DNA of 64,000 nucleotides from positions 62,001 to 126,000 of the IMG/VR virus record IMGVR_UViG_3300047445_000186. The stretch is one strand, 5' to 3'. Made by a program: the position numbers and the translations under genes. This document shows, in pieces, positions 37,763 to 60,032 of the stretch; positions within the stretch are counted from its first letter, which is position 1; the number at the start of each line of letters is the position of its first letter. Under the pieces are notes generated by a model, which saw only the letters and a list, made by a program, of their open reading frames with translations, was not told the origin of the DNA and made no database searches.

Positions 37763-38932
37763 ATGGCATCGAAAACAGACGTCACCGTCTACATCGGAAG
37801 GTTCACGCCTTTCCACTTGGGTCACGCGCATGTTCTGCGCCAAGCCCTGAACAACTCCAAGCTCGTCATCGTTCTGCTCGGTTCGGCTTATCTGGCGCGA
37901 TCACTGAAGAACCCCTTCACGTTCATCGAACGTCGCAGGATCATCGAAAGCTGGGTCTCGGCCGAGATCATGGCCGGCACGATTCCGCACGACGCCGAAA
38001 TCCACTTCGCTCCGCTCCGCGACTTCACGTACAACAACGCTCTCTGGATCCGCAATGTCCAGGAGAAGGTGAAGACGATCGTTCGCGATGTGGCACTCCG
38101 TACGAATCAAATCCTGACCGACATCCGTGTCACTGGTTCGGATCGCGATGAATCGACCTGGTACCTGAACGCGTTCCCGCAATGGAAGAAGGCGCTGGTC
38201 GAAACGTTCCGTCACGACGGTACCGGCGATCTGAGTGCGACCGAAGTTCGTGAACTCCTGTTCTCCGGCCGGGCCATGGAGCCGGGCGTTGCTGAACGCC
38301 TGATCGCGATGCTCCCACGTACGACCTATGAATGGCTAGTCAAGTTCGCCGACTCACCAGAACACTTCCGGTTGGCACGGTGGTACGAACAGAACAGAGC
38401 CTATAAGGAAGCCTGGTCGGTTGCACCGTACGCCCCGATCTTCACCACGGTCGATGCCGTGATCGTTCAGTCCGGTCACATTCTCGTCGTCGAGCGCGGA
38501 GCTGAACCGGGCATGGGGCTCTGGGCTCTGCCTGGCGGATTCCTGAACACGAATGAACGGCTGCGTGATGGCGTTGTCCGTGAAGTTCTGGAAGAAACTG
38601 GGCTGCGCCTCGCTGACGGCAAGAAGGCGAAGGAGATCACGGAAGACATTCTGAAGAATTGCATTCGTGAACAGGAAGTGTTCGACGCTCCTGATCGCTC
38701 GATGCGTGGTCGAACCATCACGCACGCGTTCTTCATTCGTCTCGATGACACGAAGCCGCTCCCCAAGGTGAAGGGACAGAACGCGCCACTGCACGAAACT
38801 GGTGGTGTCGCCGAAGTCGAGACTGCGAAGGCGTTCTGGCTGCCAATCAACGAAGCTCTGAGCCGCTCGGAGATGTGGTTCGAAGATCACCACGCAATCA
38901 TCGAGACGATGATTGGCGGAAAGGACCTGTAA
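37763..38932 (+). CDS. nadM: bifunctional NMN adenylyltransferase / ADP-ribose pyrophosphatase (NadM-NUDIX)
   Basis: IGRFTPFHLGH (HxGH), SLKNPFT, SATEVR; Nudix box LPGGFLNTNERLRDGVVREVLEETGL; FEDHH. Confidence 0.95.
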   Translation: MASKTDVTVYIGRFTPFHLGHAHVLRQALNNSKLVIVLLGSAYLARSLKNPFTFIERRRIIESWVSAEIMAGTIPHDAEIHFAPLRDFTYNNALWIRNVQEKVKTIVRDVALRTNQILTDIRVTGSDRDESTWYLNAFPQWKKALVETFRHDGTGDLSATEVRELLFSGRAMEPGVAERLIAMLPRTTYEWLVKFADSPEHFRLARWYEQNRAYKEAWSVAPYAPIFTTVDAVIVQSGHILVVERGAEPGMGLWALPGGFLNTNERLRDGVVREVLEETGLRLADGKKAKEITEDILKNCIREQEVFDAPDRSMRGRTITHAFFIRLDDTKPLPKVKGQNAPLHETGGVAEVETAKAFWLPINEALSRSEMWFEDHHAIIETMIGGKDL

Positions 38933-42797: not shown

Positions 42798-42875
42798 GAG
42801 GTGTGCCGAAGACCTCAATGAACTTCGGCAGTGAGCGATAGACGCGAGCTAAGAAAAGTAGAGGAGCTCTACCAA
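42798..42875 (+). promoter_or_regulatory. structured leader of NAMPT gene, leader motif copy 2
   Basis: GAGGT/ACCTC and TGCCGAAG/CTTCGGCA overlapping pairings; GAGCGATAGACGC; GTAGAG-GAG-CTCTAC hairpin covering the SD. Confidence 0.65.
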
Positions 42876-44342
42876 ATGTCACAAAGAACCGCAGCAGAAT
42901 TCCTGGCCCCGAAGGCCACGGACATCAAGTACACGCACGACGATCAGCTGATCATCAGCCTGATCTGCCGTACCGACTCGTACAAGTTCGGTCACCCGTT
43001 CGCATACCCCGAAGAAGTGAAGGGGATGTCCTCGTACGGCGAAGCCCGTGTCGATCGGAAGACCACGATCATTCCGTTCGGAATGCAGATCCTCGTGAAG
43101 AAGTTCCTCACGCAACGGATCACCATGGCGCACATCGACGCTGCTGAAGCATTCGCGCTCGCTCACTTCGGCCGCCCTCTGTTCGCTCGCGCTGCCTGGG
43201 AAAAGGTCGTGCAAGTGTACGACGGCTACCTGCCCCTGATCATCCGCGCAGTTCGCGAAGGTACGAAGATCACCGGTGGCCTGCCGATCTACAGCGTGAC
43301 CTGCCTCGACGAAGACCTGTTCTGGATGTCGAGCGGTATCGAAACGCTGATCCTTCGCGGTATCTGGTACCCGACGTCGATCGCGACGATGGACAACTCG
43401 ATCAAGCGCGAAATCAAGCACTACTACGAAATCACCGGCGCAGACATGAATCTGCTCCCGTTCTCGCTGCACGACTTCGGTGGTCGCGGTGTGACGAGCT
43501 CGGAGCAAGCTGAAATCGGTGGTGCAGCGCACACCGTGAACTTCATGGGTTCCGACACGGTCGAAGGCGTCCTTGCGGCGAACTTCTACTACAAGCACGC
43601 AATGACTGCGTTCTCGGTGTTCGCAACCGAGCACAGCATCGAATGTTCGTTCGGTGGTGGTCGTGAAGACGCACTGCGGTACATCCGCCAAGTGCTGAAG
43701 AACGCGCTCCCTGGCTCGATCGTTTCGTTCGTGCTTGACGGGTACGACGTGTACCGTGAAGCCGAGCTGGCCTGCACCGTGCTGCACGACGAAATCCTGG
43801 CGACGAACGCGAAGGTCGTGTTCCGCCCTGACAGCGGCGACATGATGGAAGTCGTTCCCCGCATCCTGCTCCTGCAAGCGAAGTGCTTCGGCACTGTGAA
43901 GAACTCGAAGGGTTTCCTGAAGGTGAACACCGTCGGCATTCTGCAAGGCGATGGCGTTGATCACCTTGCGATCACCTCGCTGCTTGGCAAGCTCCTGACC
44001 ATGGGGTTCTCTGCTGACAACGTCGTGTTCGGCTCGGGTGGTGCTCTCCTGCAGAAGGTCAATCGCGACACATTCAAGTTCGCACAGAAGGCCTCCGCTG
44101 TTCTCGTGAATGGCGTGTGGAAGGGTATCGCGAAGGATCCGATCACCGACCCTGGCAAGAAGTCGAAGGAAGGCATCCTCACTACCGTGCGTTCGCGCAT
44201 GACTGGTGAACTGATGGCTGCTCGCCTCGATCTGGCGCCGCTGAACGAAGAATTCGAGGACCTCCATGTCCTGGTTTACTACTACGGTCAGCTGTACAAC
44301 GAGACCACGATGGACGAAGTCCGCGAACGCGCAGCAGTCTGA
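42876..44342 (+). CDS. nadV: nicotinamide phosphoribosyltransferase
   Basis: TDSYKFGH, LHDFGGRG, ATEHS, SFVLDGYD, VFRPDSGD, LQGDG, FGSGGALLQKVNRDTFKFAQK, KDPITDPGKKSK. Confidence 0.96.
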   Translation: MSQRTAAEFLAPKATDIKYTHDDQLIISLICRTDSYKFGHPFAYPEEVKGMSSYGEARVDRKTTIIPFGMQILVKKFLTQRITMAHIDAAEAFALAHFGRPLFARAAWEKVVQVYDGYLPLIIRAVREGTKITGGLPIYSVTCLDEDLFWMSSGIETLILRGIWYPTSIATMDNSIKREIKHYYEITGADMNLLPFSLHDFGGRGVTSSEQAEIGGAAHTVNFMGSDTVEGVLAANFYYKHAMTAFSVFATEHSIECSFGGGREDALRYIRQVLKNALPGSIVSFVLDGYDVYREAELACTVLHDEILATNAKVVFRPDSGDMMEVVPRILLLQAKCFGTVKNSKGFLKVNTVGILQGDGVDHLAITSLLGKLLTMGFSADNVVFGSGGALLQKVNRDTFKFAQKASAVLVNGVWKGIAKDPITDPGKKSKEGILTTVRSRMTGELMAARLDLAPLNEEFEDLHVLVYYYGQLYNETTMDEVRERAAV

Positions 44343-46288: not shown

Positions 46289-46527
46289 TCCAGCTTCTCT
46301 TGACATTCACGACACCTGTGTCGTACACCGCGCAAGAGCTCACTGCCGTGATAAATGGTCGTGGACCGAGGCGGTGGCAAGCAAAAACCGTTCGCGTTTC
46401 GCAGATGCTGAAGATGGCCGCGGGATCACGGCGGCTCACGGTTGACCGGAAGATCATCGTGAACAAGCTCATTGTCACGTACTCAGGTCCAGAAAGCGTA
46501 TTCGAAGAGATCATGAAACGGGCGTAG
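46285..46527 (+). CDS. hypothetical protein
   Basis: AGGA SD, ATGA overlap; ends TAG. Confidence 0.6.
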   Translation: MIQLLLTFTTPVSYTAQELTAVINGRGPRRWQAKTVRVSQMLKMAAGSRRLTVDRKIIVNKLIVTYSGPESVFEEIMKRA

Positions 46528-46561
46528 AATCCTTAAATAGAAGGAACTACCTGCCCTGAAC

Positions 46562-47005
46562 ATGAAACTGTTTGAACTGAAATCCCACCGTCCGCGCGTG
46601 CACACACCGGACACGATGGATCTGTACCTTGATCTGTCCGAGTACGGCATGAGCGACGAAGTCGACGTTCAAGTCGAATACGAATACGAAGGTGAGTCGC
46701 ACACCGATCATCCTTACGGTTCCGGCACCGCTCGTGAACATCACCCAGCTCGCCTGACCGTCGGTGAAGTGAAGACGATCCGTGACGAGCCAACGTACGA
46801 TCAAGACGGGAACGAGAACGGAACTCCGCTGCCAAAGGGCACCGTGATTTCGAATCTCGAGTGGTACAAGCATGCGGACAGCCTGCACGACTGGATCGAA
46901 GAGAAGGTTCAGAGCAAGCTCGCAGACATGGCCGACGAGAACTTCGAAGAGCCAGATCGCGATGATTACTACGACGCGTACTCTGATTACGACGGCCCTA
47001 ACTGA
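46562..47005 (+). CDS. acidic late protein, MKLFEL N-terminus
   Basis: TAAATA 46534; very acidic. Confidence 0.85.
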   Translation: MKLFELKSHRPRVHTPDTMDLYLDLSEYGMSDEVDVQVEYEYEGESHTDHPYGSGTAREHHPARLTVGEVKTIRDEPTYDQDGNENGTPLPKGTVISNLEWYKHADSLHDWIEEKVQSKLADMADENFEEPDRDDYYDAYSDYDGPN

Positions 47006-47013
47006 GAACCACT

Positions 47014-47361
47014 ATGAATCTGACTGAAATCCGCGGCGCAAAGCCGCACAAATTCGCCATTGTCTATGAAGGATCATGGGAAGGCGAAGACGAGAACCAC
47101 ACTGAGTACTCGATGCTTGATGTGTTCGAAGTCTCTGCTGCCGATCTGAAGAAGTTCGCTGCCGCGAATGACTGGCCTGTCGGCGAGTTTATTGATGGCG
47201 CCGACGGTAGCGCTGAAGCAGCCACTGTTCTTGCGAAAGCACTGGAAGCTGGACAGCTCGGCAAGAAGACCGGAAAAGTTAAGGTGTTCGGTTCTGATGT
47301 CGGCGTCGAGAACGTCGAATCTGCAGATAGCAGCGTCAATCTGTTGTTCCCTGAGCTGTAA
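47014..47361 (+). CDS. acidic late protein, MNLTEI N-terminus
   Basis: Same transcription unit. Confidence 0.8.
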   Translation: MNLTEIRGAKPHKFAIVYEGSWEGEDENHTEYSMLDVFEVSAADLKKFAAANDWPVGEFIDGADGSAEAATVLAKALEAGQLGKKTGKVKVFGSDVGVENVESADSSVNLLFPEL

Positions 47362-47714
47362 TGAAACTCCAAGAACTCCACGAAGCAGCTGAAGGATCGG
47401 GCAAGACGATCATCAGCGATGCGTCAAAGACCTTGCGTGGGATCGCTGCAAAGCATGGGCTCGTGCTGAAGACGAACCCACGCGAAAACAAGACATCCTT
47501 TGTTTGGGACCTCGGTTTCGAACCAAACGCGGCGAACTACCACAAGATGCATTCGGGTGAAAGCGGCGTGAACAAGCTGTTCACTGATGCGATCGACAAG
47601 TTCTGGCAAGATGTCGCGAAGCTTCCAGGTGAAAAGTTCTCGAATGGTGTTAAGCTCGAGCCAGGCGTGAAACCACGTCACGGCTTCGGCCACTCGCTGA
47701 AGATCATGAAGTGA
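47361..47714 (+). CDS. late protein, MKLQEL N-terminus
   Basis: TAATG coupling. Confidence 0.8.
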   Translation: MKLQELHEAAEGSGKTIISDASKTLRGIAAKHGLVLKTNPRENKTSFVWDLGFEPNAANYHKMHSGESGVNKLFTDAIDKFWQDVAKLPGEKFSNGVKLEPGVKPRHGFGHSLKIMK

Positions 47715-47764
47715 TCCCGAAGATCAAGGTTCTCGAACAGACGATCTTGATCTACAATAGAAGT

Positions 47765-48040
47765 ACTGCAGCAATGCAGTGATTGCCGTAATTCGGACTG
47801 ACTTGATGGATTTTGGACGGGGGTTCGACTCCCCCCACCTCCACCAAAAGAAGCTTGATCGCAGGATTCTTCTGATGGGGGTGCCATGGTTTCGACAAGG
47901 TTACTGAGATGACGTACGCGGCAGGAGAGACGACCGACCTAATCGGCGTAAATGAAGTAAATGCTAACTCTGATAGCTTCCGTCTCGTCGCCTAAACAAC
48001 GACCCCGGTGAGGTCAGCCGCCTTATAAAGAAACGGTTAG
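47765..48040 (+). ncRNA. ssrA: circularly permuted (two-piece) tmRNA
   Basis: Acceptor piece first: GGACGGGGGTTCGACTCCCCC-CACCTCC-A-CCA ending 47846. A 30-nt spacer follows, then the coding piece GGGGGTG-CCATGGTTTCGAC from 47877. The acceptor helix pairs fully with G3-U70. Resume context GTAAAT-GCT; tag ANSDSFRLVA* at 47963-47995. TACAAT at 47753. Outer ends are approximate. Confidence 0.9.
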
Positions 48041-48090
48041 AAAATAGAAAGTTGATCAAGCCTCGGCCGAAGTCCTTTTGATTTTTCGCT

Positions 48091-48120
48091 ACAAGGACCT
48101 TCGGGTCCTTGTTTGTTTTC
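48091..48120 (+). terminator. terminator after tmRNA
   Basis: ACAAGGACC-TTCG-GGTCCTTGT-TTGTTTT. Confidence 0.8.
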
Positions 48121-48160
48121 TGGGCCTGTAAATACCGGTTTCATACACAGAGACAGAATC

Positions 48161-48385
48161 ATGGAACCAGCTCGCATAGAAGATTACTTCTTCAAGTCCG
48201 TAGCAGCGATCGGCGACACAGGCGACACCGACGTGCATCATTTCCAGACCGATGATGAGGACTACTTCTTCTCGCCCGGTGCGAACGAGTGGCCCGATTT
48301 CTTCACTGACGGGGTTGAAGACGAGAATCCGGCGCAAGGAAAAATTCCTGCAGAAAAACCGCGCAAAATTTTCTCGTCACGCTGA
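48161..48385 (+). CDS. small acidic late protein
   Basis: TAAATA 48129; ATG 48161. Confidence 0.65.
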   Translation: MEPARIEDYFFKSVAAIGDTGDTDVHHFQTDDEDYFFSPGANEWPDFFTDGVEDENPAQGKIPAEKPRKIFSSR

Positions 48386-48405
48386 ACCCGCCCTAAATAA
48401 GCCGT

Positions 48406-49086
48406 ATGATCCTCTCTGAACTCCATGGCGGCTTTGAAGGCCAAACACTCGAACAGGTCGTGAAGGCCTTGGTCACCAAGAACAAGCTCGGATCGGCTGA
48501 TGGTTCGAACGCGATCGTTCTATACGCGCCTTCCAAGAGCTACGTTTACCGCGTGTGGGTAGACGATGCTGGGTACGAAGAGTGGCTGAAGTACGCGGTT
48601 CAGAATCAATCGAATCCGCACGTGTTGAAGGTCCTCTCAAAGGTTCGCACTGTGCAGCCGAAGCTGGCCGGAATTCCTGACGGAAAGACCGTGAAGTTCG
48701 TGAAGCTTGAAAAGCTCGGCGATCTGACGATGGAACTCGCGAACACGATCACGACCGCGTTCCAAGCGGCTGGTGAGCTTGGTGAAGCCGAACTCAGAGA
48801 GATGGAGTACGACGGCTTCGTTGAGACGATGAAAGAAACGGCCGAGATGTACACCGATGACGGTGAAGGCGATCACATCGTAAAGACCATGAAGAAGTAC
48901 GATTCGTTCTTCAAGTTCTACTATGAGCTTTCGGTCGAGAAGGGGTACCGCGACATGCACGCTGAGAACTGCATGATGCGTGGCTCTGTTCCTGTGATCA
49001 TCGACCCATTGCATCTCGATGAGAACATCATCTCGGCCTCTGACATGGTCGGTGCCCTTGACCTCGGCGGGCGCGGTCCTCGCTAA
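48406..49086 (+). CDS. protein kinase-like fold enzyme with MILSEL N-terminus
   Basis: KLGSADGSNAIV glycine-rich-loop-like, LEKL hinge, YRDMHAENCMM catalytic loop, VIIDP; TAAATA 48394. Confidence 0.7.
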   Translation: MILSELHGGFEGQTLEQVVKALVTKNKLGSADGSNAIVLYAPSKSYVYRVWVDDAGYEEWLKYAVQNQSNPHVLKVLSKVRTVQPKLAGIPDGKTVKFVKLEKLGDLTMELANTITTAFQAAGELGEAELREMEYDGFVETMKETAEMYTDDGEGDHIVKTMKKYDSFFKFYYELSVEKGYRDMHAENCMMRGSVPVIIDPLHLDENIISASDMVGALDLGGRGPR

Positions 49087-49146
49087 CCCGAACTATTTTC
49101 GGAAACGGATTGTACAGGTCTCCGGGTCTGTGTATAATTCACTCAT

Positions 49147-49221
49147 GCGCCTGTAGCTCAACGTCGGAGCAGTGGATTCTAAATCTGAAGGTCGTGGGGT
49201 AGGCACCCACCAGGCGCACCA
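49147..49221 (+). tRNA. amber-decoding tRNA (anticodon CUA) with non-canonical D and T loops
   Basis: GCGCCTG/CAGGCGC acceptor, GCTC/GAGC D stem, GTGGA-TTCTAAA-TCTGA anticodon arm (CTA at 49179-49181 by canonical spacing), AGGTC variable, GTGGG-GTAGGCA-CCCAC T arm, A73, CCA; own promoter TATAATTCAC at 49133. Confidence 0.78.
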
Positions 49222-49237
49222 AATTCTGGAGTAGGAA

Positions 49238-49348
49238 ATGAGTAGACGCAAACAGCAGGGCGATGCGCTTTTCTTGGCCATTCTTGCCGTGGTTGTCACC
49301 CTTGTGGTGATCGCCTGGATTGTGCAGACACAGTCCACCTCTTTCTAG
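49238..49348 (+). CDS. small single-TM protein (36 aa)
   Basis: Not in track; AGGA SD; MSRRKQQGDALFLAILAVVVTLVVIAWIVQTQSTSF, ends TAG. Confidence 0.55.
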   Translation: MSRRKQQGDALFLAILAVVVTLVVIAWIVQTQSTSF

Positions 49349-49382
49349 TCGTAAATAGTTTCACCAACCAAAGGAGTATTCC

Positions 49383-49727
49383 ATGAAGCTGTAGAACCTC
49401 AAGTCGTACCTTTACACGATTTCTCGCCGCGATCTCCCCCTCGCGCAACAGGCCGTTCAAGCTGCCCACGCTGGCATCGAGCACGCCTATCAATTTGGTC
49501 GCCCTGCCGATCACCATCCCTCGTACATTCACCTGACGATTCGCGACAAGCATCAGCTTGAGCAACTCCGTGCGCGTCTCCACAGCGCAGGCATCGGCAC
49601 GTCCGAATTTCACGAGCCTTACCAAGACTGGGGTCTCACGGCAATCGCTTGCTGTCTGACCGAAGACAATCGCAATCTGCTCAAGGGCCTTCAGCTCTGG
49701 CGCCTTCCAACTCAGGAGATGACATGA
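49383..49727 (+). CDS. Pth2-like peptidyl-tRNA hydrolase with in-frame TAG at codon 4
   Basis: Not in track. TAAATA 49352, AAGGAG SD, ATG AAG CTG TAG, then 110 open codons: NLKSYLYTISRRDLPLAQQAVQAAHAGIEH...EFHEPYQDWGLTAIACCLTEDNRNLLKGLQLW. This matches the Pth2 V-x-R-x-DL...AQ-x-x-HA and G-x-x-T-x-x-A...L-x-L patterns. No in-frame ATG/GTG/TTG lies between the TAG and the conserved N-terminal motif. Confidence 0.8.
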
Positions 49728-50332
49728 AAATCACGTACAACGAAAATCCAATGGCCGCAACGATCGAGCTCGATGAGCATGAGAAGCGCGAGCTCCGCAA
49801 TCGAATCGAGATCAAGGAGCTGAAGGAGCTCTTGTACGACACGCACTTCCATCTGGTCGACGAGTACGACGGGAAGTACTTCGATCTGGCGAAGGCCCGA
49901 GAGAATGTGGAGCCTTCGTACTATTACGCGGACGACACCCCGACCTGCGGTCTCGAGAAGCGAGTCGAAGAACTCTACCAGTACGCGCTCAGTGAACAGA
50001 CGAGCTCCCACGCCGGTGATTGCACGTGCTTCGCCTGCTCCTGCACGAAGTGCTGGTTCGAAGGGATGCTCGGCATTGATACGATCAAGGGACTTGGGAA
50101 GCACGAAGGTCACAAGATCTACGCAGCTTTCAGCAGGGAAGGTATGACGGTCGATCGCTTGATCGCTGAGTGGGAAGCTGCTCCTCCTATCGTCGCAACC
50201 AAGGACTGGCATGAGGGTCACACTGACCGTTGGAATGCTGAACGAGCTAAGGCGCTCGCCTGGTTGAAGGAGTACCGGACGTTGGTAGGAACCACGACGG
50301 TCACCCCGGTTGGTGTCGATCGGACTCTGTGA
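49724..50332 (+). CDS. hypothetical protein with Cys cluster
   Basis: AGGAG SD, ATGA overlap with the Pth-like gene; HAGDCTCFACSCTKC. Confidence 0.85.
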   Translation: MKITYNENPMAATIELDEHEKRELRNRIEIKELKELLYDTHFHLVDEYDGKYFDLAKARENVEPSYYYADDTPTCGLEKRVEELYQYALSEQTSSHAGDCTCFACSCTKCWFEGMLGIDTIKGLGKHEGHKIYAAFSREGMTVDRLIAEWEAAPPIVATKDWHEGHTDRWNAERAKALAWLKEYRTLVGTTTVTPVGVDRTL

Positions 50333-50334
50333 AA

Positions 50335-50358
50335 CGCTATCTGTCACCTAATGCCTCT
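50335..50358 (-). repeat. dispersed 24-bp intergenic motif, copy 3 (inverted)
   Basis: CGCTATCTGTCACCTAATGCCTCT is the exact reverse complement of 401-424. Confidence 0.9.
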
Positions 50359-50388
50359 TAATTCACGCCTCACCCTAAAGGACTTCAC

Positions 50389-50997
50389 ATGACGTAGGTT
50401 TACCCCACTTCCTTCGACGAGCTCAAAGCAGCGATGCAATCAGGCACGCAAACGAGAGGGATCAGCTTCTGGGAGCATGGTTCACTTGTCTCACGCCGGT
50501 TCTGCGATCTCATGAACCCGAACCCGCAGATGATCTGGCGACTGCCTGCTTGGTTCACTGAGCACGCGGATTGGATTCGCGAGACGCTGATGCCTCACTT
50601 CGAGAACATCGCGATCTACCACCAATGGCACGATTGCGGTAAGCCGTACTGCAAGACGATCGACGAAGACGGCAAGGTCCATTATCCAGATCACGCTGAA
50701 ACGTCTGCAAAGATCTGGAATTCGCTCACTCAAGGACAAACTGACCCTTGGGCGAAGGACAATCGTTGGATTGGTTGCCTGATCCGCGATGACATGCTTT
50801 GTCATCAACTCCGTCCAGCCGATGCAGAGGCTTTCGCCTTGAACCCGAACGCTGTCACGCTTCTCACGACCGCATTGTGCGAGCTGCATGCGAACGCCTC
50901 CATGTTCGGAGGTCTCGAATCCGACTCTTTCAAGATCAAGTACAAGCGTCTTGATAAGTGCGGTGCTACTATTCTCAATAAACTCACGAAGGAATAA
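50389..50997 (+). CDS. HD-domain phosphohydrolase with in-frame TAG at codon 3
   Basis: AAGGA SD 6 nt before ATG ACG TAG GTT TAC CCC..., in frame with track ORF 50434..50997; EHG...WHDCGKPYC...DGKVHYPDHAETSAKIW HD motifs. ATG 50434 lacks an obvious SD. Confidence 0.8.
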
Positions 50998-55018: not shown

Positions 55019-55094
55019 ACCCGGTTAGCTCAGTTGGTAGAGCGGCGTCATGACATGGCGTAGGTCGTTGGTTCAAACCCAACACCGGGTACCA
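55019..55094 (+). tRNA. tRNA-Val(GAC)
   Basis: ACCCGGT/ACCGGGT acceptor; loop ATGACAT; TTCAAAC T loop; CCA. Confidence 0.85.
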
Positions 55095-55303
55095 TTGGAA
55101 ATCGCTCTTGTGACATCTTCTAACATGGAAAGATTCGCGGTGAGTATCGTAAAAATGCTGGTTTCGAGATCCAGCTGTCATTCGAGTGATTCCCAATGGT
55201 AAGAAAATCCTTGTTGTGAGGGTGGAAAGCGGAACACTGGCCATTTCGGTAAATCCTTTTGGTTGCACGCAGTTTTGAGTACATTCAACAGTCAATGAGG
55301 TAT

Positions 55304-55392
55304 GGGCCCGCTGTCCTTGGAGAGATAAGCTCGCTGTAAACGAGTGGCACGCAAATAAGTCTGAACTGGTTCGATTCCAGTCGGTCCCACCA
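55304..55392 (+). tRNA. tRNA-Tyr(GTA)
   Basis: GCTCG-CTGTAAA-CGAGT; long variable arm; CCA. Confidence 0.8.
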
Positions 55393-55400
55393 AATAACTT

Positions 55401-55483
55401 TCGCTTCAACCGTTGTGGTAACGGCCCGACTTTGAATCGGTGGTCACGAAAACTGATGAGGTTCGATTCCTCGTAGCGATCCA
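55401..55483 (+). tRNA. atypical tRNA-Gln(TTG)
   Basis: CCCGA-CTTTGAA-TCGGT; extended variable region; TTCGATT T loop; CCA. Confidence 0.65.
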
Positions 55484-55499
55484 AATTGAAGAACACCTT

Positions 55500-55586
55500 G
55501 CCCAGGTGGCGGAATTGGTAGACGCGCAGCGTTGAGGTCGCTGTGTCCGAAAGGACGTGGAGGTTCGAGTCCTCTCCTGGGCACCA
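55500..55586 (+). tRNA. tRNA-Leu(GAG)
   Basis: CAGCG-TTGAGGT-CGCTG; canonical long variable arm; CCA. Confidence 0.95.
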
Positions 55587-55681
55587 TGAAAATAAGAACA
55601 AAAACAAACACGGAACGATGTTGTCCTCGCAACATCGGGAATGTGAGGTCGCAGAAGCGATCTAAAACCGAGGCGTACTAA

Positions 55682-55774
55682 CCGTACTGATGAGCTGGTG
55701 AAACTCCAGCGAAACGCACTGAGAAAAGTTCATCGAGGTAAGAACTCTGAACGTAGTACCAGTAGCGTATACGG
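55682..55774 (+). ncRNA. type I hammerhead ribozyme
   Basis: Stem I CCGTA/TACGG; core CTGATGA; stem II GCTGG/CCAGC; GAAA; stem III ACGC/GCGT; GUA cleavage triplet with the cut after 55769. Confidence 0.85.
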
Positions 55775-55889
55775 GACAATGTGGTGAAGTTAAATGCAGT
55801 GAGTGCACTTACTGTATGATGCACCTTTGGTCAGCTTACATGCTGGTCAAGTTCAAGATCGGACCTTGATCGTTGCACCCGACCAATTT

Positions 55890-55965
55890 GGGCTTAAGCA
55901 TTGGGGTTGCGGGAACGCCTTGCAAGTGTTCTGTCAGTGGAGTTCGATTCTCCCTAGGTCCACCA
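55890..55965 (+). tRNA. tRNA-Cys(GCA)
   Basis: AACGC-CTTGCAA-GTGTT; CCA. Confidence 0.8.
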
Positions 55966-56024
55966 GAATGTTTCTCATTGTAGACAATGTACACAATGAG
56001 AAACAGTTTAAGAATGCACTTTGT

Positions 56025-56098
56025 CAGAGTGTGGTGACAAGTGGACGTCGACCGGGTTTGGAACCTGGAATATGCCGGTTCGAGGCCGGCCACTCTGA
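56025..56098 (+). tRNA. tRNA-Pro(TGG)-like, no encoded CCA, inside a 20-bp inverted repeat
   Basis: CCGGG-TTTGGAA-CCTGG; flanks 56012-56031 and 56091-56110 are perfect complements. Confidence 0.6.
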
Positions 56099-56113
56099 CA
56101 AAGTGCATTCGAT

Positions 56114-56190
56114 CGGAGATTAGCGCAGTCTGGTAGCGCATCTGCTTTGGGAGCAGAGGGTCAGAGGTTCGAATCCTCTATCTCCGACCA
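56114..56190 (+). tRNA. tRNA-Pro(TGG)
   Basis: Canonical CGGAGAT acceptor; TCTGC-TTTGGGA-GCAGA; CCA. Confidence 0.95.
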
Positions 56191-56340
56191 AATATCTCTC
56201 CATGACACGGGGAGTACAATGTGATAAGTTCCGTGTCCTTAGTCGGTGAAAGTTCGCGATAGCGCCGGAAACGGTTTGACTCGAGCAAGATGAAGATCGC
56301 TAGATCTTGCCGGGAAGCACTTGGTTATGCTTCAGCTATT

Positions 56341-56414
56341 TTGGTAGTAGCATGTGTGGGATATGCAGCCCTTTGGTGGGAAGATCACAGGTTCAAATCC
56401 TGTCTACTGATCCA
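56341..56414 (+). tRNA. degenerate tRNA-like gene (Pro TGG-like anticodon region)
   Basis: Acceptor, D and T arms and CCA present; anticodon stem poorly paired. Confidence 0.45.
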
Positions 56415-56531
56415 GGTAAGTCTCAGTCCTTCTAATGACTGAGTGGTGGAACGTCGCGTTGAAACCAATGCGGCCCCAGAACGTGAAATTGAATGTGGTC
56501 TGAACATCATTTGTTTACCACAGGAGAAATC

Positions 56532-56810
56532 ATGTTCAAAGTTCAATACGATGTCAATGTTCCAGGCGCATGGCGCGGTGCTCGGACTCTGTCCCCAGGC
56601 GATCTCGGCGAAAACCCTTCGGGGTGGACGATCACGGGTGTTGTCCATGAGGATTATTTCGAGTGGGTGAATTACTTTGAAGCGAAGCATCCTACCTTCG
56701 GGTGGGTACGTGGAGACTTCGAGTCGGAAATCCAGGCAAAATCTAAGAAAGCGTTCGCGCACTTCTTAGAGAATCATCCGCCAAATGAGTGGGATTACGG
56801 CGATATCTGA
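56532..56810 (+). CDS. conserved hypothetical protein in tRNA array
   Basis: AGGAG SD; GWTITG...EDYFEWVN...GDFE...WDYGDI. Confidence 0.8.
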   Translation: MFKVQYDVNVPGAWRGARTLSPGDLGENPSGWTITGVVHEDYFEWVNYFEAKHPTFGWVRGDFESEIQAKSKKAFAHFLENHPPNEWDYGDI

Positions 56811-56852
56811 AAGAACTCTCCTCGGTATGAGATAAAAAGGCCGTGAAATTCT

Positions 56853-56928
56853 GGGGGATTAGCTCATCTGGGAGAGCGGCAGCTTTGCAAGCTGTAGGTG
56901 ATCGGTTCGAGTCCGATATCCTCCACCA
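56853..56928 (+). tRNA. tRNA-Ala(TGC)
   Basis: G3-U70; GCAGC-TTTGCAA-GCTGT; CCA. Confidence 0.95.
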
Positions 56929-57146
56929 AATTTGATCCTAACGGCGCTAATAACCGAGATAACGCCGTGAAGAACATGAACTGCTGGCAAAGTCGATAAA
57001 TTCCTTCTCAGGATGTGCAGTTGTTCAGGGTCAATTCGTTTATTGGTTGTAGGTGCTGCCCCACGTAAAGTACAGAACCTTCAGAATTCCGTGATCAGAT
57101 ACGGCCGCCTAACAAGCGGCAAGAGTCCTCTGATCGCGATCCAATT

Positions 57147-57220
57147 TCGACGCTAGTGTAGTAGATGCACGCCGTCCATGAGTGGCGGAAGGAAAGGTGC
57201 AAATCCTTTGTGTTGATCCA
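57147..57220 (+). tRNA. atypical tRNA-like gene (anticodon position TGA, short variable loop)
   Basis: Full cloverleaf spacing and CCA, but A33 and T loop TGCAAAT. Confidence 0.5.
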
Positions 57221-57225
57221 TCTTT

Positions 57226-57297
57226 GCGGGTGGTTTGTGGAATACGTTTAGCCTTCCAAGCTGAAAGATGCAGGTTCGAACCCTGTCGCCCGCTCCA
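57226..57297 (+). tRNA. tRNA-Gly(TCC)
   Basis: TTAGC-CTTCCAA-GCTGA; U73; CCA. Confidence 0.9.
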
Positions 57298-57384
57298 TAT
57301 CTGAACGCTCTTGCGGTAAAGAGTGCAGCGCCTGCAGCGTGTCTTCTCCCTCGAGGACAAGTGCATTCGAGAGCGTTCAGATAT

Positions 57385-57470
57385 GGGTATTCGTCAGAGC
57401 TGGAGAGCTGAAGCGGGCTGTAACCCCGTTCCTTATAGGTGAGCAGGTTCGATTCCTGCAGTACCCACCA
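57385..57470 (+). tRNA. tRNA-Tyr(GTA), second copy
   Basis: GCGGG-CTGTAAC-CCCGT; variable arm; CCA. Confidence 0.88.
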
Positions 57471-57488
57471 GAATTTTAGGAGTTCAAA

Positions 57489-57752
57489 TTGCGTTGTAAA
57501 CCAGGTATCCTCGCCGAGATTATCGGCGGTGTAGATGGTCTGAACAAAGGAAAGATCGTTGAAGTCGTTGCGTTCGCAGGAATGCACGTTGAATTCGGTC
57601 CAATCTGGGAAATCAGGTCACGCACTCTCGATCTCGTTTCTGAGTACGGTGGAATGTCTAAGGACGCGCACTGTGCTGACATTTGGTTGAAGCCGATTCC
57701 AACGGATCCGCTCCCACCAAAGGTGAAGACAAAAGACCTCGAGCTCGTATGA
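57489..57752 (+). CDS. hypothetical protein
   Basis: AGGAG SD with TTG start; WLKPI motif; ATGA overlap. Confidence 0.7.
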   Translation: MRCKPGILAEIIGGVDGLNKGKIVEVVAFAGMHVEFGPIWEIRSRTLDLVSEYGGMSKDAHCADIWLKPIPTDPLPPKVKTKDLELV

Positions 57753-57979
57753 TCGTGTGTCTCTGCTACCGAGTCTCTTCGAATGAGATTCGCGACGCAG
57801 CGAAGTTCTTGAACGCGAAGACCATTGAGGAACTCCAATGTGGTCTCGAAGTCTGCCAGAATTGTGAAGTGTGCAAGCCGTACATTGAAGCGATTCTGCA
57901 GGAAACGGTTCCTTCCGTATCGCATGGGTTAAGCGATGGTGATCACGATACCACAATCGAGACGCGGCTACTGTGTTAA
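57749..57979 (+). CDS. bfd: Bfd-like [2Fe-2S] protein
   Basis: MIVCLCYRVSSNEIRDA...VCQNCEVCKPYIEAIL, the Bfd CxC...CxxC pattern. Confidence 0.75.
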   Translation: MIVCLCYRVSSNEIRDAAKFLNAKTIEELQCGLEVCQNCEVCKPYIEAILQETVPSVSHGLSDGDHDTTIETRLLC

Positions 57980-58140
57980 TGTGGTGAGATGTACTCTAGA
58001 GTCTCGGCCATGAACGTTCCTGTTCATTGGAGATACGAATATTCCCTGAGTTGGTTTATGAGAAAGTTCACGTTAACAACTGCTCAAAGCTGGTAGGTAA
58101 GCTACAAGTCGTAATGTTGGGAAACGTCGCGCAGATATAT

Positions 58141-58216
58141 GCCCTTGTAGCTCAGTGGTAGAGCACCCGCCTTGTAAGCGGTAGGTCGCGAGTTCAATTC
58201 TCCGCCAGGGGCACCA
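58141..58216 (+). tRNA. tRNA-Thr(TGT)
   Basis: CCCGC-CTTGTAA-GCGGT; CCA. Confidence 0.9.
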
Positions 58217-58224
58217 TGAATTAT

Positions 58225-58304
58225 TGCGGGGTAGGGGAGTCTGGTCGTCCCCGCCAGTCTCATAAGCTGGAGATCGTGCGGTTCAAATCCCACCCCCGCA
58301 ACCA
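58225..58304 (+). tRNA. tRNA-Met(CAT), initiator-like acceptor
   Basis: GCGGGG acceptor; loop CTCATAA; CCA. Confidence 0.8.
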
Positions 58305-58349
58305 ATTCCCTGAGTTGATGTTGAACTCTAATACAAGAAATCATCACCT

Positions 58350-58426
58350 GCCCTGTTACGCTAATTGGTAGTGCGGACAGTTTCAAACACTGTTGGTTCT
58401 CGGTTCGAATCCGAGATGGGGCACCA
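58350..58426 (+). tRNA. tRNA-Leu(CAA) with short variable loop
   Basis: ACAGT-TTCAAAC-ACTGT; 5-nt variable loop; A73; CCA. Confidence 0.78.
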
Positions 58427-58431
58427 GATTT

Positions 58432-58508
58432 GCGGTCGTGGTGTAATTGGTAAACGCCTCCGGTTCAGAACCGTAGTCCTGTGGGTTCGAGTCCCACCGA
58501 CCGCACCA
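58432..58508 (+). tRNA. tRNA-Leu(CAG) with short variable loop
   Basis: TCCGG-TTCAGAA-CCGTA; short variable loop; A73; CCA. Confidence 0.8.
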
Positions 58509-58642
58509 GAACGAAACGTGCAGCAATGCACCGATATCGCCGAACGTGGTAGGCGTAGAGCATGGGCTAAATCGATGATGCAGCATGCCGCTAAGTAACA
58601 ACCAACTCTTGTTGATTATCAGACTAAATCATCAGAATTCAT

Positions 58643-58752
58643 GCGCGTGTTGCGGAACGGCACACGCTGTCGGTAAAGAGCCGACGACCCAGACGTTCGA
58701 CTCGTCTTAAACTATGGAGGGGATGTAGGTTCGAATCCTACCGCGCGCACCA
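58643..58752 (+). ncRNA. Leu-like tRNA with an extra T-arm-like hairpin
   Basis: GCGCGTG/CGCGCGC acceptor, Leu-type D arm, GTCGG-TAAAGAG-CCGAC, extra AGACG-TTCGACT-CGTCT, then GTAGG-TTCGAAT-CCTAC, A, CCA. Confidence 0.6.
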
Positions 58753-58874
58753 GGTTTTGATCGATGCCTTAATTGGGTATCTGTGTTCCAGACGGATTGT
58801 TCTTCGGTCTGGACGTGAAGTACTCGCTCCCACAGAGTAAGAGAACATGAGGGGAGTCTCGATCAAATTAGTTT

Positions 58875-59005
58875 GGAGTCGTGGTGTAATGGTAGCACAC
58901 GTACAAACTCGATTTCTCCATTTTGTCGCTTCGGCGACCGCACTGAAATTGATTATCTCCCGTAACGAGCGGGGACCGCGGTTCGAATCCCGGTAGACTC
59001 CACCA
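58875..59005 (+). ncRNA. tRNA-like RNA with large insertion replacing the anticodon arm
   Basis: GGAGTC/GACTCC acceptor, GGTGTAATGGTAGCAC D arm, GGTTCGAATCC T arm, ACCA; 131 nt total. Confidence 0.65.
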
Positions 59006-59010
59006 AATAT

Positions 59011-59086
59011 AGGCATGACGCTGAAATGGTTTCAGGCCGCGGTCACATCGCGGATTTAGGGAGTTCGATTCTCCACTTGCCCACCA
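59011..59086 (+). tRNA. tRNA-Val(CAC)
   Basis: CCGCG-GTCACAT-CGCGG; imperfect acceptor; CCA. Confidence 0.7.
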
Positions 59087-59096
59087 TTGTTTTGAG

Positions 59097-59244
59097 AATG
59101 TTTATCAGAAAGTCTAACCGCTGACAGTTGGTTATCTACTTTTACTGCTTAAAAAATCCGGAGATGGTTCAATTCCTCTCATGGTCTGCTGGTGCCGGAG
59201 ACCAATGCCCAACTTCACTTTTGTTCGGCGTTCTGATAAACATT
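59097..59244 (+). ncRNA. candidate structured RNA closed by a 14-bp inverted repeat
   Basis: AATGTTTATCAGAA/TTCTGATAAACATT; internal hairpins, including a GGTTCAATTCC T-loop-like element. Confidence 0.45.
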
Positions 59245-59257
59245 TTGAAAGAGTATC

Positions 59258-59491
59258 ATGAAAATGGTAACCCGCGACGATTATCCTAATTTGGATCCGG
59301 AAGTTTCAGTGCACAATTGCACTGCAGAAAATCCGATGCCTCCAGAGGTTGGAGATCGCGCTCAAGAGCTGAAGCAGCTTTGGGTACATCATGATACTGA
59401 AGAAATTTGGGAGAGCGATTCAGGCCGCTTTATGCGCGTTCGCTGTCTGCACTGCAAGTACGAGTACACAATCGACTTCGGTGATGATTGA
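59258..59491 (+). CDS. small zinc-ribbon-like protein
   Basis: HNC...WVH...RCLHCKY. Confidence 0.65.
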   Translation: MKMVTRDDYPNLDPEVSVHNCTAENPMPPEVGDRAQELKQLWVHHDTEEIWESDSGRFMRVRCLHCKYEYTIDFGDD

Positions 59492-59496
59492 GATTT

Positions 59497-59571
59497 GGGT
59501 CCTTAGCACAGCGGTAGTGCGGCTCCTTTACACGGAGTAGGTCGTAGGTTCGATCCCTACAGGACCCACCA
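59497..59571 (+). tRNA. tRNA-Val(TAC)
   Basis: GCTCC-TTTACAC-GGAGT; CCA. Confidence 0.93.
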
Positions 59572-59628
59572 AGTTTTGTCACCCTACCCAAGGGGTCCAT
59601 GAGAGTGGTTGGAAGCATCATGGCAAGT

Positions 59629-59901: not shown

Positions 59902-59905
59902 ATAT

Positions 59906-60015: not shown

Positions 60016-60032
60016 ATTTAGTGGAGTGAGAC

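What the first reader, a model, noticed from the sequence alone, without database searches (positions are those of the whole stretch)
47753..48040. Phage-encoded circularly permuted two-piece tmRNA with an LVA-ending tag
Seen: the T-arm/CCA acceptor half (ends 47846) lies upstream of the GGGGGTG 5' half (starts 47877), separated by a 30-nt spacer with an AGAAG/CTTCT hairpin. The halves form a 7-bp acceptor helix with G3-U70 and A73. The tag reads ANSDSFRLVA*. Established: permuted ssrA is known from alphaproteobacteria, some cyanobacteria and a betaproteobacterial lineage, and LVA is a functional degradation-tag variant. A permuted version in a phage, 1.1 kb from the amber/Pth module, suggests a broader phage-run ribosome-rescue programme and may hint at the host lineage (inference).
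Basis: partly seen in the sequence, partly recalled or inferred. Interest (0 to 1): 0.75.

Follow-up and report, generated by a model that had tools for sequence, protein, structure and literature searches.

The report
Two-piece tmRNA gene in a jumbo phage
A 332-kb soil (rhizosphere) phage carries a complete, circularly permuted "two-piece" tmRNA gene for rescuing stalled ribosomes; the call is correct, but such genes are already known and common in phages, so the only unusual points are its LVA-ending tag and its conserved neighbours.

Summary
ARAGORN calls a permuted tmRNA at 47754-48086 with the tag ANSDSFRLVA*. Rfam beta_tmRNA scores 130.9 bits (cut-off 84) and tmRNA_permuted 125 bits (cut-off 47). 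The alpha, cyano and standard-order models all fall below their cut-offs. CCA ends at 47846 and G1 is at 47877. The acceptor stem has 7 pairs with G3-U70 and A73. The locus lies in a 331,776-bp phage record from rhizosphere metagenomes and is identical in three independent assemblies.

It is not new in kind. Two-piece tmRNAs in phages are published (Melnitz; 53 cases among isolate genomes). One pattern scan found 115 IMG/VR contigs with the same junction, many of them beta-type. Cultured Pseudomonas, Alcaligenes, Caulobacter and Brevundimonas phages carry them too, so the type is a poor guide to the host.

The phage has no SmpB, RF-1/ArfB-domain protein or bacterial-type Pth, so it must use host factors. 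No RNA data exist.

The LVA ending is unique among about 108 viral permuted tmRNAs examined.

The most interesting by-product is a module conserved in four related jumbo-phage contigs: tmRNA, amber-suppressor tRNA, and a Pth2-fold gene with an in-frame TAG after a short leader (codon 4 here; six distinct contigs in all).

The parts
47753..47758 (+). Putative -10 promoter element TACAAT of the tmRNA precursor (inferred)
   Evidence: It aligns with TATAAT (preceded by TGn) in the orthologous locus L168, 6-8 nt upstream of the conserved 5' hairpin. The simple sigma-70 scan did not call a full promoter, so this is inference.
47764..47781 (+). 5' leader hairpin at the start of the acceptor piece
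   Evidence: 7-bp stem, -8.8 kcal/mol, z=-2.6. The 16-nt core is 100% identical in L168, although the flanks diverge.
47784..47815 (+). Strand of helix P2 carried by the acceptor piece
   Evidence: In the Rfam beta_tmRNA alignment it pairs with 47896-47923. 18 of 20 pairs are standard and 2 are flagged non-standard.
47819..47835 (+). T-arm (GGGGG / TTCGACT / CCCCC)
   Evidence: The stem covaries in relatives: GCGGG/CCCGC in L168 and GGGAG/CTCCC in L167.
47836..47846 (+). Acceptor-stem 3' strand CACCTCC, discriminator A73 and encoded CCA (3' end of the acceptor piece)
47847..47876 (+). Intervening spacer, predicted to be removed during processing
   Evidence: 30 nt. Its hairpin is not significant alone (z=-0.77), but acceptor stem plus spacer folds at -21.2 kcal/mol, z=-3.9. 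Spacer length varies from 30 to 128 nt in relatives.
47877..47895 (+). 5' end of the coding piece: acceptor 5' strand GGGGGTG (G3 pairs with U70) and the D-loop-like CCATGGTTTCGA
   Evidence: Compensatory changes in relatives keep the stem paired: GGGGCCG/CGGCTCC, GGGGGCG/CGCCTCC and GGGGCTG/CAGCTCC.
47896..47923 (+). Strand of helix P2 carried by the coding piece
   Evidence: Rfam alignment.
47963..47995 (+). Tag reading frame: resume codon GCT, ANSDSFRLVA, stop TAA
   Evidence: ARAGORN. The Rfam alignment places the conserved UAAAUGC resume context here.
47996..48058 (+). 3' helices of the coding piece (weak match to the beta-specific part of the model)
   Evidence: End of the Rfam beta_tmRNA alignment, with several non-standard pairs.
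48091..48120 (+). Intrinsic terminator ending the precursor transcript
   Evidence: 9-bp GC-rich stem followed by a T run; -15.2 kcal/mol, z=-4.85.
49147..49218 (+). Context: amber-suppressor-like tRNA (anticodon CUA) with an atypical T-loop, preceded by TTGTAC-17-TATAAT at 49110-49138
   Evidence: Rfam tRNA 43.4 bits; ARAGORN does not call it; sequence read; aligned with tRNA(CUA) genes of relatives.
49383..49727 (+). Context: Pth2-fold gene with an in-frame TAG at codon 4
   Evidence: Translation. AlphaFold model pLDDT 93.4. Top PDB matches are all Pth2 proteins, TM 0.7-0.77. The TAG after a short leader is conserved in the relatives.

Best explanation
This is a genuine and probably functional circularly permuted (two-piece) tmRNA gene of the 'beta' structural type, carried by a 332-kb jumbo phage from rhizosphere soil.

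Shown: the sequence has every sequence-level hallmark of a tmRNA in permuted order, and it is conserved with compensatory changes in related phages.

Inferred mechanism: a precursor of about 350 nt is transcribed from just upstream of 47764 to the terminator at about 48120. Host RNase P cuts at G1 (47877), and 3' trimming stops at the encoded CCA (47846), which discards the 30-nt spacer. The acceptor piece (about 47764-47846) and the coding piece (47877 to about 48060-48120) stay together through the 7-bp acceptor stem and the roughly 20-bp helix P2. Host alanyl-tRNA synthetase charges the RNA through G3-U70 and A73. Host SmpB, since the phage has none, delivers it to ribosomes stalled on broken or stop-less mRNAs. 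Translation then resumes at GCT 47963, appends ANSDSFRLVA and terminates at TAA, which frees the ribosome and marks the product for proteolysis.

Inferred purpose: to raise ribosome-rescue capacity during infection. One likely use is handling ribosomes that run to the end of a message after stop-codon readthrough caused by the phage's own amber-suppressor tRNA, which is a conserved neighbour together with a Pth2-fold peptidyl-tRNA hydrolase candidate.
For: Identification: ARAGORN permuted tmRNA. Rfam beta_tmRNA 130.9 bits against a cut-off of 84, and tmRNA_permuted 125 against 47. Alpha 46.6, cyano 48.7 and standard 34.4 bits are all below their cut-offs. All 7 acceptor pairs and all 5 T-stem pairs are standard, as are 18 of 20 P2 pairs.

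Phage origin: the record is a 331,776-bp virus record, CheckV 94% complete. It has 44 tRNAs and exactly one tmRNA, and phage-type neighbours such as DNA ligase, RNA ligase and NAD-salvage genes. The stretch is identical in a second IMG/VR contig and in contigs from three separate sequencing runs, with 0 differences.

Selection for structure: related phages keep G3-U70 and A73 while changing both sides of acceptor and T-stem pairs. A strong terminator follows the gene.

Conserved module of tmRNA, tRNA(CUA) and Pth2-like gene: window, L168, L167 and L014. Suppressor tRNAs also sit next to permuted tmRNAs in L085, L092 and Alcaligenes phage QDWS595.

Literature: nonsense suppression generates non-stop complexes handled by SsrA (Ueda 2002, as cited in PMC8012679). 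Huge phages carry tmRNAs (PMC7162821). Two-piece tmRNAs occur in phages (PMC9004378). An LVA tag is degraded in E. coli (PMC3511798).
Against: There is no expression or processing evidence, because no RNA run holding the sequence was listed. The host is unknown, so compatibility with its SmpB, AlaRS and proteases is untested. The phage encodes no SmpB. The beta-specific parts add only about 6 bits over the model of the tRNA-like domain alone, and the model's PK1 hairpin is only half satisfied by eye. The tag is atypical: it has Arg at -4 and Val at -2, and the LVA ending is the only one among about 108 viral permuted tmRNAs. The window's own tRNA(CUA) has a degenerate T-loop and a weak anticodon stem and may not work. 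There is no genome-wide TAG recoding. Only 3 of 108 other viral loci show a suppressor tRNA in the fetched flanks, and no background rate was measured.
Confidence: 0.75

Rival explanations
1. The RNA works on the trans-translation pathway but not as a simple booster. It may compete with the host tmRNA for SmpB and replace the host degradation tag with a phage-specified tag (LVA here, AHA in L014). That tag could change the fate of tagged proteins, for example through slower or different proteolysis, or evasion of a host response that senses tagging.
For: The tag C-termini deviate from the canonical LAA/IAA in two of the four clade members: LVA in the window and AHA in L014. LAA ends 83 of 110 ARAGORN calls from the viral-scan loci, a count that includes the window's three duplicate calls. 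The phage has no SmpB and must share the host's. A phage tRNA-like-domain-only tmRNA (DS6A) has been reported to inhibit host tmRNA (PMC4131195, PMC11915505).
Against: LVA is still an efficient degron in E. coli (PMC3511798). The other two clade members have canonical endings: AIAA in L168 and RLAA in L167. The full mRNA-like domain is intact.
Confidence: 0.13
2. It is a recently acquired or decaying passenger gene with no role in infection.
For: There is no expression data. The beta-specific 3' region matches the model poorly. The adjacent tRNA(CUA) looks degenerate.
Against: Syntenic orthologues exist in divergent relatives. The tmRNA aligns to the window's only locally (L168: 81% over 102 nt; the 551-nt 100% match is a duplicate of the same phage, not a divergent relative). 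Compensatory changes preserve the stems, and G3-U70 and A73 are invariant. The resume context, reading frame and stop are intact. The gene has its own terminator. No close bacterial donor was found.
Confidence: 0.08
3. It is an artefact: host DNA mis-assembled into the phage contig, a leftover attachment-site fragment of a host ssrA gene, or a normal-order tmRNA that was misread.
For: Phages that integrate into ssrA often carry 3' fragments of the gene (PMC4383910, PMC9004378).
Against: Both halves and the tag frame are complete. The stretch 46500-50500 lies in one piece with 0 differences in contigs from three separate runs and in a second IMG/VR contig. The standard-order model scores 34.4 bits, below its cut-off of 47. 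Related jumbo phages have the gene at the same position.
Confidence: 0.02

Closest known systems
Betaproteobacterial two-piece tmRNA (Rfam RF01850; 'third lineage' of Sharkady and Williams 2004, as cited in PMC9004378)
   Same: Same permuted gene order, encoded CCA, acceptor stem GGGGGUG/CACCUCC with G3-U70, T-arm, D-loop-like GGUUUCGAC, P2 layout, UAAAUGC resume context and a 10-residue tag beginning AN. It scores above the family cut-off, whereas the alpha and cyano models do not.
   Different: The score is modest: 130.9 bits, against 279.8 for an Azoarcus chromosome copy. The regions outside the tRNA-like domain and P2 fit poorly. The tag ends LVA rather than the (L/I/M)AA typical of these tags. 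The gene is carried by a phage, and no close bacterial relative was found among 401 Burkholderiales genomes.
Phage-encoded two-piece tmRNAs already described: Methylophilales phage Melnitz, pelagimyophages and cyanophages (Buchholz et al. 2022, PMC9004378)
   Same: A complete permuted ssrA in a lytic-type large phage without its own SmpB, proposed to maintain hijacked translation. That paper counted 53 two-piece tmRNAs among 133 unique tmRNA structures in isolate phage genomes.
   Different: Melnitz has an alpha-type RNA with a glutamine riboswitch and comes from marine myophages of 140-ish kb (size from memory). This one is beta-type, comes from soil, lies in a 332-kb genome, showed no riboswitch at Rfam gathering thresholds, and sits beside a suppressor tRNA and a Pth2-fold gene.
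Unannotated permuted tmRNAs in cultured phages: Pseudomonas phage PA_L9, Alcaligenes phage vB_Af_QDWS595, Brevundimonas phage Bajun, Caulobacter phage CcrRogue
   Same: All are detected by the same Rfam models. PA_L9 is beta-type at 101 bits and QDWS595 is beta-type at 93.8 bits. Bajun is alpha-type at 57.4 bits, and CcrRogue matches the generic permuted model at 88.2 bits. QDWS595 has an ochre-suppressor tRNA abutting the tmRNA.
   Different: Sequence similarity to the window is limited to the T-arm and acceptor end. The tags are canonical (ANDTSFDVRLAA, ANDNVYAAAA). The genomes are smaller and no Pth2-like neighbour was seen.
Caulobacter crescentus two-piece tmRNA (Keiler, Shapiro and Williams 2000, cited in PMC8012679 and PMC9004378)
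   Same: The only type of permuted tmRNA I know of with direct evidence that a single precursor is cut into two base-paired pieces that function in tagging. It is the mechanistic template used here.
   Different: It is alpha-type and chromosomal, with a longer tag. Processing of the phage RNA is inferred by analogy only.
One-piece phage tmRNAs (mycobacteriophage Bxz1 group, Bacillus phage G) and the tRNA-like-domain-only RNA of phage DS6A (PMC4131195)
   Same: Phage carriage of ssrA-type RNAs alongside large tRNA sets.
   Different: These have the standard gene order, or in DS6A no coding part at all.

Membership tests
tmRNA (ssrA) | tRNA-like domain: 7-bp acceptor stem with G3-U70, discriminator A73, a CCA end and a T-arm with a GGUUCGAnUCC-type loop | tested here: met
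   Read directly. Rfam alignments show no non-standard pair in either stem. G3-U70 and A73 are invariant in six phage homologues, with compensatory changes elsewhere.
tmRNA (ssrA) | Long helix P2 joining the tRNA-like domain to the rest of the RNA | tested here: met
   18 of 20 modelled pairs are standard. Free-energy co-folding alone did not recover this helix.
tmRNA (ssrA) | mRNA-like domain: GCN resume codon in a conserved context, and a short frame ending in a stop and encoding a tag with a hydrophobic/Ala C-terminus | tested here: met
   UAAAU-GCU resume context, ANSDSFRLVA, TAA. The ending is LVA rather than LAA.
tmRNA (ssrA) | Pseudoknot PK1 upstream of the resume codon | tested here: inconclusive
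   By eye, the hairpin that the beta model places there has only 2 of 4 standard pairs. Pseudoknots are not modelled by the tools used.
tmRNA (ssrA) | Score at or above the curated Rfam threshold | tested here: met
   RF01850 130.9 against 84, and RF04321 125 against 47.
tmRNA (ssrA) | Works with a dedicated SmpB partner | tested here: not met
   No SmpB (PF01668) was found in the 332-kb phage record at E<=1. A host SmpB would have to serve, which cannot be tested here. This bears on autonomy, not on the identity of the RNA.
Permuted (two-piece) tmRNA | Gene order: acceptor half with encoded CCA upstream, then a spacer, then the 5' half and the tag frame | tested here: met
   The standard-order model scores below its cut-off. 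The order is reproduced in independent assemblies.
Permuted (two-piece) tmRNA | The precursor is cut into two RNAs that stay base-paired | not testable with these tools
   No RNA run holding the sequence was listed.
Beta-type permuted tmRNA (RF01850) | Fits the beta model better than the alpha or cyano models and passes its threshold | tested here: met
   Beta 130.9 (cut-off 84); alpha 46.6 (cut-off 50); cyano 48.7 (cut-off 70). Most of the score comes from the shared tRNA-like domain.
Beta-type permuted tmRNA (RF01850) | Occurs in, or was derived recently from, a betaproteobacterial host | tested here: inconclusive
   A strict junction pattern hits only four bacterial genomes, all betaproteobacterial. 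However, the best BLAST match in 401 Burkholderiales genomes is 78% over 85 nt, and the same type occurs in a Pseudomonas phage.
PTH2 peptidyl-tRNA hydrolase (neighbouring gene, context only) | PTH2 fold and sequence-family membership | tested here: inconclusive
   The fold test is met: pLDDT 93.4, and the top 15 PDB matches are Pth2 proteins except rank 3 (2gax, a protein of unknown function), with TM-scores of 0.55-0.77. The Pfam PTH2 score of 14.3 bits is below its cut-off of 23. Catalytic residues were not examined.

The most novel reading that the evidence does not exclude
In a clade of soil jumbo phages, the permuted tmRNA, one or two amber-suppressor tRNAs and a Pth2-fold hydrolase form one co-adapted unit. 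The hydrolase gene can only be translated in full by reading through a conserved TAG that follows a three-codon leader. The suppressor tRNA would switch on the hydrolase and, as a side effect, drive ribosomes past TAG stops to the ends of messages. The phage tmRNA and the hydrolase would then clear the resulting stalled ribosomes and dropped peptidyl-tRNAs, and the phage-specific tag (LVA here) would set the fate of the readthrough products.
Probability: 0.2. Interest if true: 0.65.

Novelty: new member of a known kind. Interest (0 to 1): 0.35.

Why it matters
As a tmRNA call it mainly matters for annotation. Permuted tmRNAs are missed in many deposited phage genomes. Four cultured examples detected here have no tmRNA among the annotated features listed for three of them; the Brevundimonas phage Bajun site was not inspected. 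Spurious small ORFs are easily called across such genes. The result also warns against using the tmRNA type to guess a phage's host. The wider interest lies in the conserved neighbourhood. A phage lineage that keeps a ribosome-rescue RNA, a stop-codon suppressor and a peptidyl-tRNA hydrolase candidate together, with a conserved in-frame amber codon in the hydrolase gene, offers a concrete and testable case of a virus managing the side effects of its own interference with translation termination.

Tried and rejected
1. My first two collection scans returned nothing because I miscounted the bases between the T-loop and the acceptor strand. The corrected pattern, checked on the window first, found 115 viral contigs.
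2. BLAST of the tmRNA and of 16 kb around it against deposited phages gave only T-arm-length matches or none, so there is no close cultured relative.
3. Minimum-free-energy co-folding of the two pieces recovered the acceptor stem and T-arm but not P2. I relied on the covariance-model alignment instead.
4. MAFFT misaligned the 5' half between the window and L168 because the spacers differ in length. Stems were compared after anchoring on motifs.
5. Genome-wide TAG recoding was tested and rejected. Same-frame segments of at least 100 aa joined across a stop number 14 for TAG, 31 for TAA and 91 for TGA.
6. A phage-encoded SmpB, bacterial Pth or RF-1/ArfB-domain protein was not found.
7. Pfam on seven neighbouring ORFs gave no hits, and one weak sub-threshold hit on a further two ORFs upstream.
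8. A profile search of the Pth2-like family against PDB sequences gave nothing useful. Only the fold comparison was informative.
9. No RNA sequencing run was listed, so processing into two pieces could not be examined.
10. The spacer hairpin as a meaningful feature was rejected.

Full report
**1. The observation**

- The T-arm (GGGGG / TTCGACT / CCCCC, 47819-47835) is followed by CACCTCC, A and CCA, ending at 47846.
- After a 30-nt spacer, GGGGGTG begins at 47877, followed by the D-loop-like CCATGGTTTCGA.
- The two strands form seven pairs, including G3-U70, and the discriminator is A.
- The frame from GCT 47963 reads ANSDSFRLVA and stops at TAA 47993-47995.

ARAGORN, which has a dedicated mode for permuted genes, calls 'tmRNA*' at 47754-48086 with the same tag. 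Rfam gives beta_tmRNA 130.9 bits (cut-off 84, E=1e-39) over 47733-48058, and tmRNA_permuted 125 bits (cut-off 47) over 47784-47995. In that alignment no acceptor or T-stem pair is non-standard, and 18 of 20 pairs of helix P2 are standard. A junction pattern matches once in the window and never in 100 shuffles.

Two details need correction. The spacer hairpin is not better than chance on its own (z=-0.77).

**2. It is not a misread normal-order gene or an artefact**

Scored family by family on the whole phage record, the results are:

| Rfam model | Bits | Cut-off |
|---|---|---|
| beta_tmRNA | 130.9 | 84 |
| alpha_tmRNA | 46.6 | 50 |
| cyano_tmRNA | 48.7 | 70 |
| standard-order tmRNA | 34.4 (at this same T-arm) | 47 |

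No T-arm/CCA complementary to GGGGGTG lies downstream. The stretch 46500-50500 is present in one piece, with no differences, in contigs assembled from three separate rhizosphere sequencing runs. A fourth run has a contig crossing the junction. A second IMG/VR contig of 234.5 kb is 100% identical over 551 nt.

**3. Where it sits**

- The window is part of a 331,776-bp virus record, estimated 94% complete, with 54.2% G+C, 44 tRNA genes and this single tmRNA.
- Nearby genes match phage families for DNA ligase, RNA ligase, nucleotidyltransferase and NAD salvage.
- One large protein has its only cultured relatives, at 26-30% identity, in phiCbK-like Caulobacter and Brevundimonas phages and some Vibrio phages.
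- All five listed runs that hold the sequence, in full or in part, are rhizosphere metagenomes.
- No RNA run was listed.

**4. How it most likely works**

Shown: all sequence-level hallmarks of a tmRNA are present in permuted order (section 1).

Also shown: selection on structure in the phage lineage. The six phage homologues anchored by motif are the window, L168, L167, L014, Alcaligenes phage QDWS595 and Pseudomonas phage PA_L9. All six keep G3-U70 and A73. Other acceptor pairs change on both sides (GGGGGTG/CACCTCC, GGGGCCG/CGGCTCC, GGGGGCG/CGCCTCC, GGGGCTG/CAGCTCC), and the T-stems covary (GGGGG/CCCCC, GCGGG/CCCGC, GGGAG/CTCCC).

Inferred by analogy with the Caulobacter two-piece tmRNA (cited in PMC8012679 and PMC9004378):
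- One precursor is made, probably starting just after a -10-like TACAAT (47753-47758). That element aligns with TGnTATAAT in the orthologue L168, just before a 5' hairpin whose 16-nt core is identical in both.
- The precursor ends at the terminator.
- RNase P cuts at G1, and 3' trimming stops at the encoded CCA, which removes the spacer.
- The two pieces stay paired through the acceptor stem and P2.
- Charging by AlaRS, delivery by SmpB, and tagging and release follow the standard trans-translation scheme.

The phage encodes no SmpB, no RF-1/ArfB-domain protein and no bacterial-type Pth. The RNA therefore depends on host factors.

**5. The tag**

Among about 108 permuted tmRNAs found in IMG/VR contigs, tags end in LAA (83), IAA (10) or MAA (5). 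LVA occurs only in this phage and its duplicate contig. In E. coli, LacI carrying AANDENYALVA is degraded with a half-life of about 13 min, against about 8 min for the LAA version (PMC3511798). This has not been tested in the present tag context (Arg at -4) or in the unknown host.

**6. Comparison with what is known**

Phage-borne two-piece tmRNAs are established.
- Buchholz et al. 2022 (PMC9004378) describe one in phage Melnitz. They counted 53 two-piece forms among 133 unique tmRNA structures in 18,146 phage genomes, mostly aquatic.
- The tmRNA database lists 79 phage sequences (PMC11915505).
- Huge phages are reported to carry tmRNAs (PMC7162821).

My own scan found 115 IMG/VR contigs with the junction pattern, and ARAGORN confirmed 108 of them. 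Of 30 such IMG/VR loci run through Rfam, 18 pass the beta-type threshold, 3 the alpha-type, and the rest only the generic permuted model. The pattern may favour the beta type.

Cultured phages carry them too:
- Pseudomonas phage PA_L9: beta-type, 101 bits.
- Alcaligenes phage vB_Af_QDWS595: beta-type, 93.8 bits.
- Brevundimonas phage Bajun: alpha-type, 57.4 bits.
- Caulobacter phage CcrRogue: generic permuted model, 88.2 bits.

The annotated features listed for the PA_L9, QDWS595 and CcrRogue sites include no tmRNA. The Bajun site was not inspected.

**7. Host lineage**

The strict junction pattern hits only four bacterial genomes, all betaproteobacterial. Three of the four copies are atypical: two score just above the beta cut-off and one below it, and all three have long odd tags. 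BLAST against 401 Burkholderiales genomes gives at best 78% identity over 85 nt.

A beta-type gene also occurs in a Pseudomonas aeruginosa phage. P. aeruginosa has a one-piece tmRNA by my knowledge, which was not tested here. In the Melnitz case the tmRNA type does not match the host (PMC9004378). Together these show that the type is a weak guide to the host.

**8. The neighbourhood**

About 1.06 kb downstream lies a tRNA-like gene with anticodon CUA (49147-49218). Rfam scores it at 43.4 bits, ARAGORN does not call it, and its T-loop is atypical.

It is followed by a gene (49383-49727) whose fourth codon is TAG.
- Its Pfam PTH2 match is sub-threshold at 14.3 bits.
- A confident model (pLDDT 93.4) has Pth2 structures as its top matches, apart from one protein of unknown function (1wn2, 1q7s, 3erj, 2zv3, 1xty; TM 0.7-0.77, probability 1.0).
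- In the relatives the body of the gene lacks its own ATG. It is preceded in frame by ATG, two codons and TAG in five distinct contigs, counting the window, plus a duplicate of one of them; L014 has a longer leader.

The arrangement of tmRNA, tRNA(CUA) and Pth2-like gene recurs in three other jumbo-phage contigs:

| Locus | Contig size | Tag |
|---|---|---|
| L168 | 376.6 kb | ANDSNYAIAA |
| L167 | 310.7 kb | ANDSAFYGDTRLAA (read by eye) |
| L014 | 332.3 kb | ANAPKAMAAHA |

Two further relatives with the Pth2-like gene (L171, L172) show no tmRNA within 4 kb.

Suppressor tRNAs also sit beside permuted tmRNAs in three unrelated loci: L085, L092 and the Alcaligenes phage.

Nonsense suppression is a known source of non-stop ribosome complexes handled by SsrA (Ueda 2002, cited in PMC8012679). 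A functional link is therefore plausible. It remains inference, because no background rate of suppressor tRNAs was measured, the window's own suppressor looks degenerate, and the genome is not TAG-recoded. No paper in the held library describes such a module.

**9. Verdict**

The identification is correct and robust. The element is a new member of a known kind. The idea of a linked rescue module gains real, though indirect, support from conserved synteny.

Noticed in passing
window 49383-49727; L168 3929-4276; L167 3977-4318; L171 3938-4279; L172 3932-4279; L014 4572-5009: The Pth2-fold gene has a conserved in-frame TAG. In five distinct contigs (counting the window), plus a duplicate of one of them (L169 = L168), an ATG, two sense codons and TAG (MKL*, MQS*, MKH*, MRS*, MTL*) lie in frame with a body that lacks its own ATG. 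L014 has a longer leader. This looks like programmed amber readthrough, or a minigene-like leader coupled to a peptidyl-tRNA hydrolase candidate.
   Followed up: partly
window 49110-49218: A tRNA-like gene with anticodon CUA sits behind a near-consensus TTGTAC-17-TATAAT promoter. Its T-loop (GTAGGCA) and anticodon stem are atypical. ARAGORN misses it, and Rfam scores it at 43.4 bits. Relatives have well-formed tRNA(CUA) genes at the same place.
   Followed up: partly
L157 (OK149171.2, Alcaligenes phage vB_Af_QDWS595) 1453-1873; L158 (PP869205.1, Pseudomonas phage PA_L9) 1440-1860; JX100814.1 102546-102864 (CcrRogue); ON529858.1 192435-192747 (Bajun): Four cultured phage genomes carry permuted tmRNA genes. 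The annotated features listed for three of them (QDWS595, PA_L9, CcrRogue) include no tmRNA; the Bajun site was not inspected. In the Alcaligenes phage an ochre-suppressor tRNA (anticodon UUA) abuts the tmRNA.
   Followed up: partly
L119, L120, L122 (Oxalobacteraceae and Burkholderiaceae genome contigs): These are permuted tmRNA copies with unusually long tags (23-28 residues, for example ...NGNCYQQAA and ...DKCFEMVA) and low beta-model scores (80-96 bits). They may be second copies borne on mobile elements in bacteria that normally have one-piece tmRNA. This was not examined further.
   Followed up: no
L085 2891-2965 and L092 3274-3347: In two otherwise unrelated viral contigs, the only tRNA near the permuted tmRNA is an amber suppressor. 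In L092 it directly abuts the tmRNA's 3' end.
   Followed up: no
window 13064-14146, 17433-18854, 24008-25321, 37763-38932, 42831-44342: Genes matching phage families for nucleotidyltransferase, ATP-dependent DNA ligase, RNA ligase, an NMN adenylyltransferase/NUDIX fusion and nicotinamide phosphoribosyltransferase lie upstream of the tmRNA. They could form an RNA-repair and NAD-salvage set.
   Followed up: no
window 55019-61249 and genome 167.8-173.7 kb: There are two large tRNA arrays (24 ARAGORN calls in the window, 44 in the genome). They include calls with odd anticodon loops, such as 56341-56414 with a two-base 'anticodon', and unusual anticodons (ATC for Asp, ACC for Gly).
   Followed up: no
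window 47678-47907, both strands: Small ORFs (42-69 aa) overlap the tmRNA on both strands. The translated matches to other viral contigs at this spot reflect the conserved RNA, not proteins, so gene callers are likely to report false proteins here.
   Followed up: partly
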